A DNA stretch of 53,816 bases from Saccostrea cucullata (taxonomy: Eukaryota). The notes under the pieces were generated by a model. That model was not told the origin of the DNA. It worked only from the letters and a program-made list of their open reading frames with translations, and did not search any database. The position numbers were made by a program, and so were the translations under genes. Shown one piece after another: positions 41,808 to 49,008 of the stretch. The first letter of the stretch is position 1; each line of letters starts with the position of its first letter. Where the stretch lies: the NCBI RefSeq assembly GCF_032062105.1, contig NW_026938165.1, positions 62,001 to 115,816 of the forward strand, written 5' to 3'.

Positions 41808-44724
41808 TTAGTTAATGTACTGAGCTAGCCAGCGGAAGCCTTCCCCATACCCTTGTCTTTTCAGAACACTACACATAAATAACTCCATTGGACGGCCAGG
41901 AAGCTCATTTCTGGACACAGTTCCCTAAATAGGAAAAGTAAGATTTTAGCAAGAATTAAGTAATATTTTTAACATGTCCTACCTTTACTCTTAGTGGACA
42001 CAAGACACCAAAATGGACATAATTATCTTCTAATAAATATAATTATTTTACTCTTTTTTAAAAATTTATTTTTAGTTATTTATATATTTTTTTCCTCAAA
42101 TCAAAGAAGAGTTTTCATACTTAAAATAATTACATTCTTTAAATCTAGTTGAGCTTTAAAAATCACAAAAAATCTAAGTGTTGTCATTGCCTCTATCATG
42201 TATCTCTTCAGCATTCACCTCTTATATACAAAGATTCATCAGAGACCTATAATTCTTACCTTTCCTGTGGTTTGTCCGTGTAACCCTAACCAGTGACGAA
42301 TCTCGTCTTCACTTGCAGCACCAGCCTTGTCGATTTTGTTACCTAGAACAAGAACAGGGGCACTGGCCACTTGTTCATCTGTCAGTAAACTCTGAAATAC
42401 AACATGAGAAAAATTAATACTCTTTCTTTTTATACTACATTATAGGTCTTGACTGCTCTTATTTTATTGTGTTATGCTGTACCTACATCTAATTCTGCTT
42501 TTGCCTCAGCAAATCTCTGTCTGTCGCATACATCTACTAAGAACACAATACCATCAACTGCTGGAAAATACTCCTTCCACACTCTTCTGGCTGTTAATAC
42601 AAAGGTACATTTTGTAATTCTTTCATTAAATTCCGCATGGAAACCACAAAAAAATCATTTACCAAATACAGCATACACTGTAATCTATCCTGTATATTGA
42701 GGATCCACCTTCTTTACAGAGCTTTGTTTTGCTCTGATAATTTTTAAAGAAAAAGAAAACCTTATTTTTAAGAGCCGTATATGTATTTATTTACCTTGTT
42801 GATGACCTCCAAGGTCAAAGGTTGTGAACCTCATTCCTCCCATTGATAATTCTTCTGAAGCTAAAATTTATGCATAACATGGAATTAAAACAACTCAGTT
42901 TGACAATGAATTATGCTATTTCTTCATTAACAAATACAATAATAAAGGCAGCATCAGAAACAGGTCTTACATTAATTATATTAATTTGTAAGTATGTAAA
43001 AAAAAAAAAAATGCAGTTTTCCAAATAAATTTAAAGTTTTGGAAATTGCACCACTTTACATCATCTTTACATTTAATTAAGTCAAAGGATGAACACATTT
43101 GTTGTCAACATTTGTGCAGTAGTTGTAATTTCATGACTTGGAGAGTTTTTTAACATAAACATAATCAAATAAATTTAAAGTCTTGGAAATTGCACCACTT
43201 TACATCATCTTTACATTTAATTAAGTCAAAGGATGAACACATTTGTTGTCAACATTTGTTCAGTAGTTGTAATTTCATGACTTGGAGAGTTTTTTAACAT
43301 AAACATAATCAACATTGAAATCCCAAAGTTAACCTGTGGTTTACCAATTAAAAACACATTATTACTCAGTAAAAATTTGAAATCCTCTCTGATGTTTAAA
43401 GCTGGAAACACTTTTATGCCTCAGAAAAATACATTAACAAGGTATCCCATTTCCAAGTGAACAATATAAGCTCATGCTTACTTGGGTGGAGTGTGGGGAC
43501 ATGCTGTGCCATCCTGTCATCTTTTAACATGTGAAGCAGTGTTGTCTTTCCAGCATTGTCTAGACCAAGGAACACAAGCTTACCAGACTTTTTATACAAT
43601 CCTAAAATATAAAGCCATGCCGTTTAAATATCATGCAGTTTGCCATACTTACAGTTTTAGAGGGTTCAAATCACGCTCCACTCGTATAGGAAAATACATA
43701 TGTACCTTAAGTACATTTCAGGTTCACACAAAAGTTATGAATAAACACACATATTTAACATAGAGCACATTATTTCTGGGAAAGCCAATAATTTCATTCT
43801 GCAGCTTAGTGCAATACATATTGTAGAGTTATAACACATTATCTTTTTCCTTTTTCTTTTTATAAATTAGCGATTTTTAAATTTTAGATTATCTTGTTTT
43901 ATGTACGGTAATATGTGTAACCGAAGTGAATATTTTACCATTTCCTTTCTTAAAATGAATTGATTTACATTTTCTCGTCAACTCAAGTATATTTATTACT
44001 CTATTTTAATACTGTTCAATAATTCTTGATAATTCAATCAAATTTTCAAATTTTTTTTCCTTCAGTTGTATCACATCCCTCACCAACTAAATTAAGATCA
44101 TACTTCCTTTCTGTTGATCAGTGGTCACCCAACCAACCAACAAAGCTATCTAAATGCTGTAGTAATGCATACAGTACAAAGTGTATGAATCCACCTTGCA
44201 TATTTAGCATTTAATTATACAGAATGATATAAAACTTTTGGTATGTATATCAATCAATTAGTATTAACATATGTGGTGATTGGCCAGTGCAAACCATTTA
44301 GTTAACAAATATATGAAACTATTTTATGGATGCATAAAAATGCACAAGTTCTTTCAAATCTAGGTATATGTCCATGATGCAACACAGAGGACAAACTGGC
44401 TTGCGAGCATATTATCGGCAGCTTACTTGGGTGTAGTGTAGGCACAGGCTGGATGATATGGCCTGCTTTCAACACACTCAGCAGTGTTGTTTTTCCAGCA
44501 TTGTCTAACCCCAACAAGAGAAGCTTGCCAGATTTTTGACGCAATCCTCATATATAGAAATATACACATTTATAACAATAACCTGTTTATAACTGGCTTA
44601 GCCTAGTTTTTAAGATTTCTTAATAATATAACAAAGGATACATTTTTTCCTATTAAAGTAGAATGAAAATGTTGCTCTTACCTAGATAATTTAAAATGCC
44701 GGCAAACCAGTCCCACAAAAACAT
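41808..44724 (-). CDS. SAR1: Small GTPase Sar1 (COPII), 193 aa
   Basis: Exons 44682-44724 ([15 protein letters not shown]), 43482-43601 ([18 protein letters not shown]), 42795-42860 (FDLGGH), 42487-42590, 42260-42391 (GNKID), 41808-41924 ([22 protein letters not shown]). Total 582 nt. Confidence 0.97.
43022..43312. repeat. Near-perfect ~144-bp tandem duplication in SAR1 intron
   Basis: caaataaatttaaagt.ttggaaattgcacc...aaacataatcaa occurs twice (43022, 43166). Confidence 0.9.
44427..44546 (-). CDS. SAR1: Duplicated alternative SAR1 coding exon 2 (P-loop/switch I variant)
   Basis: 120 nt, phase 1-1, [40 protein letters not shown]. Donor GTAAGC is identical to the canonical exon; acceptor is gAG. 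Confidence 0.75.
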
Positions 44725-44956
44725 CTTTCAAATCTATATAGAAGACCTGCAGCTGAAAATACAGAAGACACACACCCATTACATGAAATATTATGCAAGA
44801 CAAAGAACTTATCACTATTCACATACAGCATGTTTTGTAACATACATATCCTGATCTGGATACATTGTGTGCTAAGAATAATTGGTGTTTTTTTATATTC
44901 TGTGAGTGAATAAATAACCTATTCTAATTTCATAATAAGAATGCAAGGAATGTAAC

Positions 44957-45436: not shown

Positions 45437-45540
45437 GTAGTGTCAGATGTAGAGCGTATTTTTGTCAACTATCGTGAAAGAAAACAGTATAACGAGCCCC
45501 ATGAATGCAAGAAAGTTCTTGGTGGAAATCAAATGTTATT

Positions 45541-46018
45541 CAGGTCCAGTCCAAAGACTATTTCTACCTACATAGCTATTAATAGCTATGTAGGTATTTA
45601 AACCTACCCAGAGTAGCTATTTTTACCTACTTTCTGCTTTACTTGCATTTTATGGCCAAATTCAGGAACGGCGCAACATGGTGAGCTCAAAATTCCTTGA
45701 TACAGTCACACTGATGATGGATATGACAAAAATTTGGCCAAAAAATGATTACTTCGTACATTATCTATTTCGCATTGAATCTAATGTAAAATTGCTGATT
45801 CATGAAGTAATTATTTTTTGGCCAAAATTTTGTCTTATTCATCATTAGTGCGACTGTATCAAAAAATATGGTATTCACCATGTTGCGCCATTCGGTCTTT
45901 TGGCCACAAAATGCAGATTAAACAAAAAGTAGGTAAAAATAGCTACTTTAAGTAGGTTTAAATACCTACGTAGCTATCAAAATCTACCTAGGTACAAATA
46001 ATCTTTGGACTGAACCTG
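45541..46018. mobile_element. ~480-bp foldback element (long imperfect palindrome)
   Basis: caggtccagtccaaaga...tctttggactgaacctg, with arms of ~215 bp matching throughout (e.g. tagctatttttacctacttt / aaagtaggtaaaaatagcta; ggcgcaacatggtga / tcaccatgttgcgcc). Confidence 0.85.
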
Positions 46019-49008
46019 TTAATTGTTTTGTTTAAAAACTATTGCAAGATTTTAAAAAATTAGTTTTTACCGGAAATATTCACTTGCCGGATCAGATAAG
46101 TACATTGGCAGTTTAACTTGGGAACATACTAAAGACCAATCTCAAAATTTACTGGCCTTGAGCAATTGAAGTTCTTTAAACAGCAGTTAATGTCGATCCC
46201 TGCTCTGTTTTGGGAGTTTGTTAGGACTGTTTGAAGAGATGAATACAAAAAGAAAACTGAATACTCATCTGGACTCACTCTGATAGTCTAACTAGTGATA
46301 TATAAGAGTTTTCAACATTATACTGGATCTTAAGTTGGAGGATTTTGTTTGTCTGTTGTGTTTGTTTTTTTAAGAACCAGTTCAACAGGTTCAAGATCAA
46401 ACCCACACTGCCCCAATGTATTTGAAAAAAAATAACAGTTTTAGAATCATCATTTCTCCCAACCGTTGCGAATCTTGCATAAAAATATACTTGGAAAAAT
46501 TCTTCGTATATGAAAGTGAATCATAGTCACAGATTCACAAAATATCATCATCAGTTCAGAGGTTATGGTCCCAAAAACAGATGTTCTAGAACACAAAAAT
46601 CGTGGACTAAGTAGCAATGGGCGCCGCCGCTAGGTGGCGCTGGCGGTAAGTTTTCCCGCAATCACGAAAAGTTGACCTCGTTGCGCTTGGGATTTTTCCC
46701 GGTCTTGTATGATAAAACCTGAGGCTAAAATACGAAAGTAATGGTGCGAAACTAAAGTCAGGAGTTCTAATTTGACGTATATGATATTTATAGAAAGCAC
46801 ATGGTAAGAAAATGGCAATTTATCGATATTTAAAGTGAAAAAATAGGTGGGAAGACTAGAAATCGGCAATATACGCAGATTTTACGGTCATTTTTGAGTA
46901 ATTTGATCTTTTTTAAGCTTAAAACAATACGAGGATAATAAGTATTTGCTCCGATAATAATGTAAAATCGATGTTCAATCCGGTAGGGTCAAACGAACAA
47001 GAACGATAACTCTAATGTTTTTAAATCCGAGGAAAATAAACAAGGCATTTAATCGCCGATTTTTTCCTGTTCAGTAAGTTTTCCTGTTTTTATCCTCGAA
47101 AAATATATTATTTTTGATTTATAAACACATGAAAATATGTCATTCTCTCCTTTAATGACATTATTTTGCAAACTGTAAAGACCGACAATTCTGTGTATCT
47201 CAAAACTCTTGCACTTGCAAAGTTGCAGAACGATATGTCTTTGTCAATTTATTTTGAAAGTTGAATCACAGGAAGAACTTCAAGACACTTAAGTCAGTTA
47301 TGTGTAGCTTACAACTTTGTCATAATAAATTTCTATATGCTCTGCAAATTGATAAATTATAAATATAATTTAATTAATTTAAACATGTTAAATGCTAAAG
47401 TTAAAGTTGAATAAATCTAATTCATATGCAAAATATTTTAAATTAAAATGTCAAGTAAACTGTAATTGCAGACCACTTTTTAAAATTCTTTTTTAGGAAT
47501 TTATTGAGAAAAATCAGCCAACTCCTGAAACTAGTGAAAGTCCTTTACTATTTTTCATTGTGATTTTTTAAAAATTTTATTTCAAATTTAGCACAAGCCC
47601 TCATACTAAAGTTGAGACATTCCAATAAATATGGATATCATTTTAAGAAGATAAAGAAAACATTTTCTTCTACACTTGAGAATAATAATTATTCTTTCAA
47701 TACCTTTTAATCATTTCTTTTTCAAATTTTAATTGTTTTGTAAATAGAGGATCTAGAGGAGATGTATAAAGAGAGGACAGTGGTTCTAAAAGAAGTATAA
47801 TAAATGTAGATTTTATATAGTGTTAAATTTGATAAAAACACAGTTTTATAAACCACAATTTCATAAACCTTTTCATCAATGTCAGGGATTGTGAACATAA
47901 ACATAATGAAACTGTGTAGACTTTAATACAAGAATATAATGTAACTTTCCATGTATGGTAGACAGTGTACGATAGAGTTCTTCAGAGTACTGAAGAAAAG
48001 TTGTGTATTTTAATATAGTTAGACTATTTATGTATATACAATTTGATTTAACAGTATATTAAAATATATTTCAACATTTGTCCCAAATATTTGTTTATTT
48101 AGCAATATTTGGACAAGGAAGCAACATTCATGATTGAATGCAATGAACAGATGATGGTTATAAACACCCCAATCTTATTTACTATTTTGTTTCAGACTTA
48201 TTAATTTCAACTAAATCTTGTTTATCAAAAATTAAATTAATTGCATTACATAAACTTTAATATTTTTCACATTAACAATGAAACATTTGAAGTTTGATTA
48301 GATCAAGATCAGGATCAAACCATAAGATAAACCAATGTAAACCGTAACCTGAAATCAAAAATTAAAATAACTTCTAAAATAAGGAACACATACACATTTT
48401 ATTTAAATATATGTTAAATATGTTAAACCAATGTTGAAAAACATACAAAAAGCAGTTTTACTGCATTTAATTATAAAATTTTACTAGCGTACTCTAAAGT
48501 ACTCTATCTTACAAGCGTACTCTGTTTTGTAGGACAGTAAGGTGAAAGAGGGTAGGTGTGTTTATTAGTATTCTAAGGCTATAAAAATTCTCATTTTCAA
48601 TAAATTAAGTTCATATTTAGATTAAACACACCCAAAAAAGGTTAAATAGACATTTAGTTATCTTTTATTTGATAAATTTTCATCAGTATAATGTGAGGTC
48701 AGATATTTTTAAAAGTCAGAAAATTAGCCAATTGAAATTGCGTGGGGGGTACCCATGTTTGCCAGTTAATTGTGATGCAATGGAAAGAGATACAATGAAA
48801 TGGTTGTCAATTTTGAAATCAGCATGCTCAAATTGAGAGGAATGTGAGGAAAAAATCTGAAAAAATACTGTTTTTAAAAATCACCCCCTGATGCTAGACT
48901 AAGGTCAATCAATCTGAACATCTGAAGTTTCTCAGCTGAAGAAAATATGTTCAAACGTTCACCACACTCTAAACTAAATTACAATTTTGTTCTCATGCTA
49001 AGAAATAC

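What the first reader, a model, noticed from the sequence alone, without database searches (positions are those of the whole stretch)
43482..44546. SAR1 has two tandem versions of the P-loop/switch-I exon: candidate mutually exclusive splicing of a COPII GTPase
Seen: 44427-44546 and 43482-43601 are both 120 nt, phase 1-1, indel-free, with the same GTAAGC donor. By hand alignment 11 codons differ synonymously and 12 residues differ. [11 protein letters not shown] and VPTLHP are untouched, while [12 protein letters not shown] becomes [12 protein letters not shown]. Known: this segment leads into switch I, which contacts Sec12 and Sec23, and is highly conserved in Sar1; vertebrates diversify Sar1 by gene duplication (SAR1A/B). 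Inference: silent divergence with preserved motifs indicates selection, so one gene may make two Sar1 isoforms with different partner or cargo behaviour. Caveat: the variant exon has a weak gAG acceptor.
Basis: partly seen in the sequence, partly recalled or inferred. Interest (0 to 1): 0.8.

Follow-up and report, generated by a model that had tools for sequence, protein, structure and literature searches.

The report
Ancient alternative switch-I exon of Sar1
The gene for Sar1, the switch that starts protein export from the ER, carries a second version of its nucleotide-binding/switch exon that molluscs, an annelid and spiders have kept, so these animals very probably make two Sar1 proteins from one gene; fruit fly and a sea cucumber lack it, which may be why it has gone unreported.

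Summary
SAR1 (minus strand) has two 120-nt, phase 1-1 copies of exon 2: variant A (44546-44427) and canonical B (43601-43482); each gives a 193-aa ORF. The order exon1-A-B recurs at DNA level in scallop, apple snail, an annelid, a spider and, degenerate, a stick insect. A-to-A dN is 0.10-0.24 with near-saturated dS. Automated RefSeq models hold A-only isoforms in a chiton, six gastropods and two spiders. One animal has an A-only gene copy with a spliced sequence. Drosophila erecta and a sea cucumber have one copy only. The RBFOX motif GCATG is enriched just after A and just before B (16 vs 3.5 expected; repeated in a held-out locus), the FGFR2 IIIb/IIIc layout, which suggests a tissue-specific swap to a minor isoform. 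Switch I does not contact Sec12 in the solved complex. Seven literature searches found no report. The scan had not noted SAR1 elsewhere.

The parts
44682..44724 (-). SAR1 coding exon 1 (43 nt from ATG; N-terminal amphipathic helix); probable acceptors near 44753/44747
   Evidence: same 43-nt exon in all related loci
44427..44546 (-). Variant exon 2A (120 nt, phase 1-1): end of N-helix, beta1, P-loop, helix 1, switch I with the [12 protein letters not shown] segment; weak gAG acceptor
   Evidence: orthologous exons; dN/dS
43482..43601 (-). Canonical exon 2B (120 nt, phase 1-1), 39/39 identical in protein to scallop and Paralvinella
43632..43637 (-). TGCATG (RBFOX-type site) about 35 nt upstream of the exon B acceptor
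   Evidence: matching sites before B in scallop, L011, spider, stick insect, L025
43616..43620 (-). GCATG 19 nt upstream of the exon B acceptor
43473..43477 (-). GCATG overlapping the exon B donor (+5); same position in scallop
42795..42860 (-). SAR1 exon 3 (66 nt; interswitch, DLGGH)
42487..42590 (-). SAR1 exon 4 (104 nt)
42260..42391 (-). SAR1 exon 5 (132 nt; NKxD)
41808..41924 (-). SAR1 exon 6, coding part to the stop codon
53184..53799 (+). MRPS24 exons, head-to-head neighbour as in Paralvinella and Pomacea (locus orthology)

Best explanation
An ancient tandem duplication of Sar1 exon 2, most simply in a protostome ancestor, left two alternative exons. Most cells splice exon1-B-exon3 and make ordinary Sar1 (inferred: the molluscan transcript-like sequences seen are B-type). 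Exon A has a weak acceptor and is skipped by default (weak acceptor shown). In cells with an RBFOX-family factor, (U)GCAUG sites after A promote A and sites just before B and on its donor repress B, giving exon1-A-exon3 (motif layout shown; binding and tissue inferred, neurons or muscle most likely). The product is a 193-aa Sar1 with intact amphipathic helix, P-loop, switch-I threonine and switch II but a rebuilt helix-1/switch-I surface (human numbering H43 to S/G, H53 to P in 21/21, A51 to T/I/V/L/S; in lophotrochozoans also M44V, D48G, R49H). It should still be loaded by Sec12 but differ in switch-I dynamics, GTP hydrolysis or Sec23/31 engagement (inferred). Step odds: A is functional 0.95; A replaces B in mRNA 0.8; RBFOX-type control 0.6; altered COPII biochemistry 0.6; single protostome origin 0.8.
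For: Exon1(43)-A(120)-B(120) in the same order and phase in scallop L012, L011, L013, Paralvinella L014, Pomacea L018, spider L017, L025; 108-nt degenerate A in Timema L016. Window A vs other A: dN 0.10-0.24, pS 0.66-0.93. Window A is closer in protein to the five lophotrochozoan A exons (28-35/39; spider A 26/39) than to its own B (27/39). All 21 A exons fall on one side of one branch from 17 B exons and outgroups (83/75, 90% of bootstrap trees). A-only models: XP_064601537.1, XP_050391097.1, XP_025097842.1, XP_013073226.2, XP_059177297.1, XP_076438255.1, XP_035212656.1, XP_055933472.1. Intronless Logan contig L015 joins exon1-A-exon3 and matches, exon by exon (81-93% nt), an intron-containing gene L023 with A and no B. 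GCATG: 16 in the 100 nt after A plus 100 nt before B against 3.5 in shuffles (p<0.0005), top of all 5-mers (7/8 loci), 10.9/kb against 1.2/kb at 33 constitutive flanks (Fisher p 8e-6); held-out L025 has sites at +53, -41, -22. Position rule and FGFR2 precedent: PMC2777236. AlphaFold2: a natural A-only protein gives the Sar1 fold (pLDDT 77, pTM 0.78); a natural A+B model leaves residues 3-54 below pLDDT 50.
Against: No junction reads from this species. RefSeq isoforms are automated models whose support I could not inspect. A+B models exist and are in frame. In this genome the 100 nt after A hold no GCATG; the sites are at B only. The motif was noticed by eye before testing (Poisson p about 1e-3 after correcting for 1024 5-mers), and related species are not independent. 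GCATG is also enriched after B (5 vs 1.2), which could favour B. An RBFOX gene was not located here (uninformative). The tree has 39 columns and weak support. AlphaFold confidence follows the alignments given. L015 is a paralogue in another, unnamed animal.
Confidence: 0.72

Rival explanations
1. Exon A is a cassette mostly included together with B, giving a 233-aa Sar1 with a 40-residue insert between the membrane helix and the G domain (a spacer, competing switch-I decoy or dominant-negative form).
For: A+B is in frame; 232-233-aa RefSeq models in Pomacea, four arachnids and others; insect and shrimp A copies have lost the P-loop consensus and appear in gene models only ahead of B.
Against: In lophotrochozoans and arachnids A keeps every P-loop residue and the exact length, expected of a replacement and not of a spacer; A-only models exist in the same species; an A-only gene exists; the A+B model is poorly ordered.
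Confidence: 0.15
2. The exon pair is real, but A arose separately in lophotrochozoans and in arthropods, and the shared residues are convergent.
For: Arachnid A keeps D48/R49 and differs from lophotrochozoan A; branch support is weak; some single-copy Sar1 genes also have P at 53.
Against: Same upstream position, shared loss of H43 and A51 plus P53, one-branch split in 90% of bootstrap trees, same GCATG layout in spider and stick insect.
Confidence: 0.15
3. Exon A is a relic that is no longer spliced in this species.
For: gAG acceptor, no clear branch-point match, no reads seen; lost in Drosophila.
Against: Open frame, intact donor, no substitution between haplotypes, dN about 0.1 against annelid and snail A with near-saturated dS; weak acceptors are usual for A.
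Confidence: 0.04

Closest known systems
Mutually exclusive homologous exons from tandem duplication under Fox-1/RBFOX control: FGFR2 IIIb/IIIc, C. elegans egl-15 5A/5B, alpha-actinin NM/SM (PMC2777236)
   Same: Two homologous same-phase exons in one gene; (U)GCAUG sites upstream of the exon to be repressed and downstream of the one to be promoted.
   Different: Here the swapped unit is the P-loop, helix 1 and switch I of an essential small GTPase; both-in and both-out keep the frame; regulation is inferred from motifs only.
Vertebrate SAR1A/SAR1B paralogues
   Same: Two Sar1 proteins in one animal.
   Different: Whole-gene duplicates that are nearly the same across this exon, whereas A and B differ at 12 of 39 residues, 8 of them in helix 1 and switch I.
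Alternative splicing of COPII parts: Sec16 (PMC4980449), SEC31A exon 24c (PMC12265942)
   Same: Splicing tunes ER export by tissue or cell state.
   Different: Those are cassette exons in scaffold or coat proteins of mammals; this is a homologous exon swap in the GTPase, old and seen only in protostomes so far.
GNAS/GNAO1-type and Rac1b splice variants of GTPases (own knowledge, not checked here)
   Same: Splicing alters a G domain.
   Different: GNAO1 swaps C-terminal exons and Rac1b inserts 19 residues after switch II; neither replaces the P-loop/switch-I exon.

Membership tests
Sar1 GTPase (isoform A) | P-loop GxxxxGKT and switch-I threonine; best match Sar1 rather than Arf | tested here: met
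   best PDB hits SAR1A/B (E 4e-10), Arf1 weaker (E about 1e-5)
Sar1 GTPase (isoform A) | N-terminal amphipathic helix, DLGGH, NKxD in the same ORF; Sar1 fold | tested here: met
   local splice check; fold of the natural Pomacea A-only protein
Sar1 GTPase (isoform A) | Sec12-dependent loading and COPII coat recruitment | not testable with these tools
   Needs biochemistry
Mutually exclusive homologous exons | Tandem homologous exons of matching length and phase with intact splice sites | tested here: met
Mutually exclusive homologous exons | Both exons conserved under purifying selection | tested here: met
Mutually exclusive homologous exons | Each exon occurs alone in mRNA | tested here: inconclusive
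   A-only and B-only database models in other species and spliced A-only L015 (a paralogue); no reads for this species
Mutually exclusive homologous exons | Exons are not included together | tested here: inconclusive
   A+B automated models exist; no steric or frame-based block
RBFOX-regulated exon | Conserved (U)GCAUG in flanking introns in the known positional pattern | tested here: met
   in this genome only the B-side sites are present
RBFOX-regulated exon | Binding and response to RBFOX level | not testable with these tools
   could not locate the gene (search had no working control)

The most novel reading that the evidence does not exclude
Protostomes evolved, before molluscs and arthropods split, an RBFOX-switched neuronal or muscle Sar1 isoform with its own switch-I chemistry that changes COPII coat lifetime or cargo range; later lineages kept it (molluscs, annelids, arachnids), split it into a separate gene (L015/L023, perhaps the C18156 paralogue here), turned it into a P-loop-dead regulatory segment (shrimp, many insects) or lost it (Drosophila).
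Probability: 0.3. Interest if true: 0.82.

Novelty: new member of a known kind. Interest (0 to 1): 0.66.

Why it matters
Sar1 is among the most conserved trafficking proteins and invertebrates are usually taken to have one form of it (own knowledge). A second helix-1/switch-I sequence held across molluscs, an annelid and arachnids is a natural variant of the switch that sets COPII assembly and GTP timing. It gives a direct test of an open question, whether cell types tune ER export at the GTPase itself: two proteins that differ in 12 residues can be compared in budding and GAP assays, and public Aplysia, Lymnaea, Biomphalaria or Parasteatoda tissue data can show where A is used. It also explains a recurring annotation error risk (232-233-aa 'double P-loop' Sar1 models).

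Tried and rejected
Word shares (at most 0.15) cannot tell A from B. The joined spliced model was never used as a search query: exons were searched by reference, and full-length queries were database proteins (P0123, alignments A4-A6); the joined translation was only a local frame check. A 39-aa query was too short and was re-sent as the open frame with a region. Assembly artefact or collapsed paralogues: rejected (haplotig, divergence, conservation). Recent duplication: rejected. Pfam Fox-1_C search uninformative. tblastx for neighbours found nothing, the family search then found MRPS24. Third protein search added no A+B model outside protostomes; plant double hits are fused tandem genes. Seven paper searches for a prior report found none; subscription journals and exon databases are not covered. 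Bi et al. 2007 was not held, so the Sec23/switch-I contact rests on own knowledge. The costly representative search was not run: 50% clusters would merge A and B forms.

Full report
Observation. The window holds a six-exon SAR1 gene on the minus strand with two candidates for exon 2: A at 44546-44427 and B at 43601-43482. Both are 120 nt, phase 1-1, AG/GT-bounded, 87/120 nt identical, with 16 identical, 11 synonymous and 12 non-synonymous codons. Either gives a 193-aa ORF; including both (233 aa) or neither (153 aa) also keeps the frame. Introns are 135, 825 and 621 nt. B matches human SAR1A/B residues 21-59 almost exactly, and A still hits Sar1 first. The genome has an allelic haplotig with both exons unchanged while introns differ at 43 of 1502 sites. 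The animal is a mollusc, probably a bivalve (inferred: exon 1 and exon B peptides equal the scallop's).

Conservation. Searching with exon A alone returned about 18 clusters with S/G-V-L-K-E/A-G-H-x-x-Q-P-x-P-T. Fetched loci show exon1(43 nt)-A(120)-B(120) in Mizuhopecten, two unnamed ENA genomes, the annelid Paralvinella, Pomacea, the spider Stegodyphus and a JGI contig. MRPS24 lies head-to-head with the gene in this window, Paralvinella and Pomacea. Database proteins extend A to a chiton, Patella, Sinanodonta, Biomphalaria, Physella, Lymnaea, Aplysia, Babylonia, Nucella, Batillaria, several spiders, a scorpion and a pseudoscorpion. Shrimp, cockroach, cricket, stick-insect, beetle and wasp gene models carry a diverged A-like segment ahead of B, in insects without the P-loop consensus; only Timema was checked in DNA (108-nt exon, 67 nt before B). 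Drosophila erecta and Holothuria have a single exon 2 even with a profile that detects the Timema copy. Window A against other A exons has dN 0.10-0.24 and pS 0.66-0.93. On a 39-column tree all 21 A exons are one side of a branch (83/75): one origin is allowed, not proven.

Is A spliced in place of B? Indirect evidence: A-only 192-193-aa RefSeq isoforms sit beside B-only ones in Liolophura, Pomacea, Babylonia, Stegodyphus and Argiope. An intronless Logan contig (L015) joins exon 1, an A-type exon and exon 3 and corresponds to an intron-containing gene (L023) that has A and no B, so an A-type Sar1 is made as a full protein in at least one animal, from a paralogue. The molluscan transcript-like Logan/JGI proteins I saw are B-type, so B is the major form. 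A+B models of 232-233 aa also exist, so exclusivity may be leaky or the models may be over-joined; nothing steric or frame-based enforces it in this genome. AlphaFold2 folds a natural A-only protein as Sar1 and leaves the extra segment of a natural A+B protein unordered, weak evidence because it follows the alignments. The joined model of this window was left out of all searches.

Regulation. Exon A often has a poorer acceptor (gAG here, aAG in L011 and L025, pyrimidine-poor tracts in scallop and Paralvinella). GCATG is the most widely shared 5-mer in the 100 nt after A and before B: 16 copies against 3.5 in shuffles, 7 of 8 loci, 9-fold over 33 constitutive flanks, none upstream of A. A locus found later repeats the pattern (+53, -41, -22). 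In this genome the sites lie at -35 and -19 of B and on its donor. Fox-1 family proteins repress an exon from upstream sites and promote it from downstream sites, and act so on FGFR2 IIIb/IIIc (PMC2777236). RBFOX-positive cells, usually neurons and muscle (own knowledge), would then switch from B to A. Caveats: post hoc motif, related species, some enrichment after B too, one such site upstream of the single Holothuria exon, no binding data.

Effect on the protein. In human numbering A keeps G32-T40, K46, Q52 and P55-T56 and changes H43, A51 and H53 in all 21 copies; lophotrochozoan copies mostly add M44V, D48G and R49H; Y22/K23 at the end of the membrane helix vary. [quoted passage not shown] The likelier effect is on switch-I conformation, hydrolysis and the Sec23-bound state (own knowledge and inference).

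Comparison and novelty. It works like a tandem-duplicated, RBFOX-steered alternative exon pair; the structural tests for that class are met, the transcript tests are inconclusive. COPII splicing is known for Sec16 and SEC31A (PMC4980449, PMC12265942); the latter mentions tissue-specific SAR1A splicing in humans without detail in the passages read. Seven searches found no report of this exon pair, although the isoforms sit unremarked in automated annotation. Verdict: real, selected, probably protostome-wide, apparently undescribed; a new member of a known kind; interest 0.66.

Noticed in passing
G000:C18156 about 92986-94903 (L009 4987-6904): A second, divergent Sar1 gene with the same intron positions and a single exon 2 bearing A-like residues (S43, G48, I51); exons 2-6 read open, exon 1 not found. 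May be a duplicate that kept only the A-type exon; its long branch is unplaced.
   Followed up: partly
L023 561-2653 and L015 190-765: A Sar1 paralogue in an unnamed animal with exon A only and a spliced counterpart: possible splitting of the two isoforms into separate genes.
   Followed up: partly
L016 2133-2240 (Timema) and insect proteins P0132, P0135, P0445, P0458, P0468, P0206: Insect exon A copies keep a hydrophobic strand, a broken P-loop and a P-x-P/Y end; some beetle copies are longer. In Timema the A-B intron is only 67 nt. Possible pseudo-GTPase or regulatory use.
   Followed up: partly
window 43311-43024: 144-bp tandem duplication in the intron after exon B, single-copy in the haplotig; a roughly 470-bp stretch at 45432-44960 is also missing from the haplotig.
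   Followed up: partly
window about 49100-49015, minus strand: Probable non-coding first exon of SAR1 ending in a GTAAGT donor, with a GCCATTTT (YY1-like) motif; not tested.
   Followed up: no
   Followed up: no
window 44380-44372, minus strand: GCATCATGG about 47 nt after exon A is also present after exon A in scallop; may be a second intronic element.
   Followed up: no
window about 45540-46020: Inverted-repeat element (MITE-like) upstream of exon 1.
   Followed up: no
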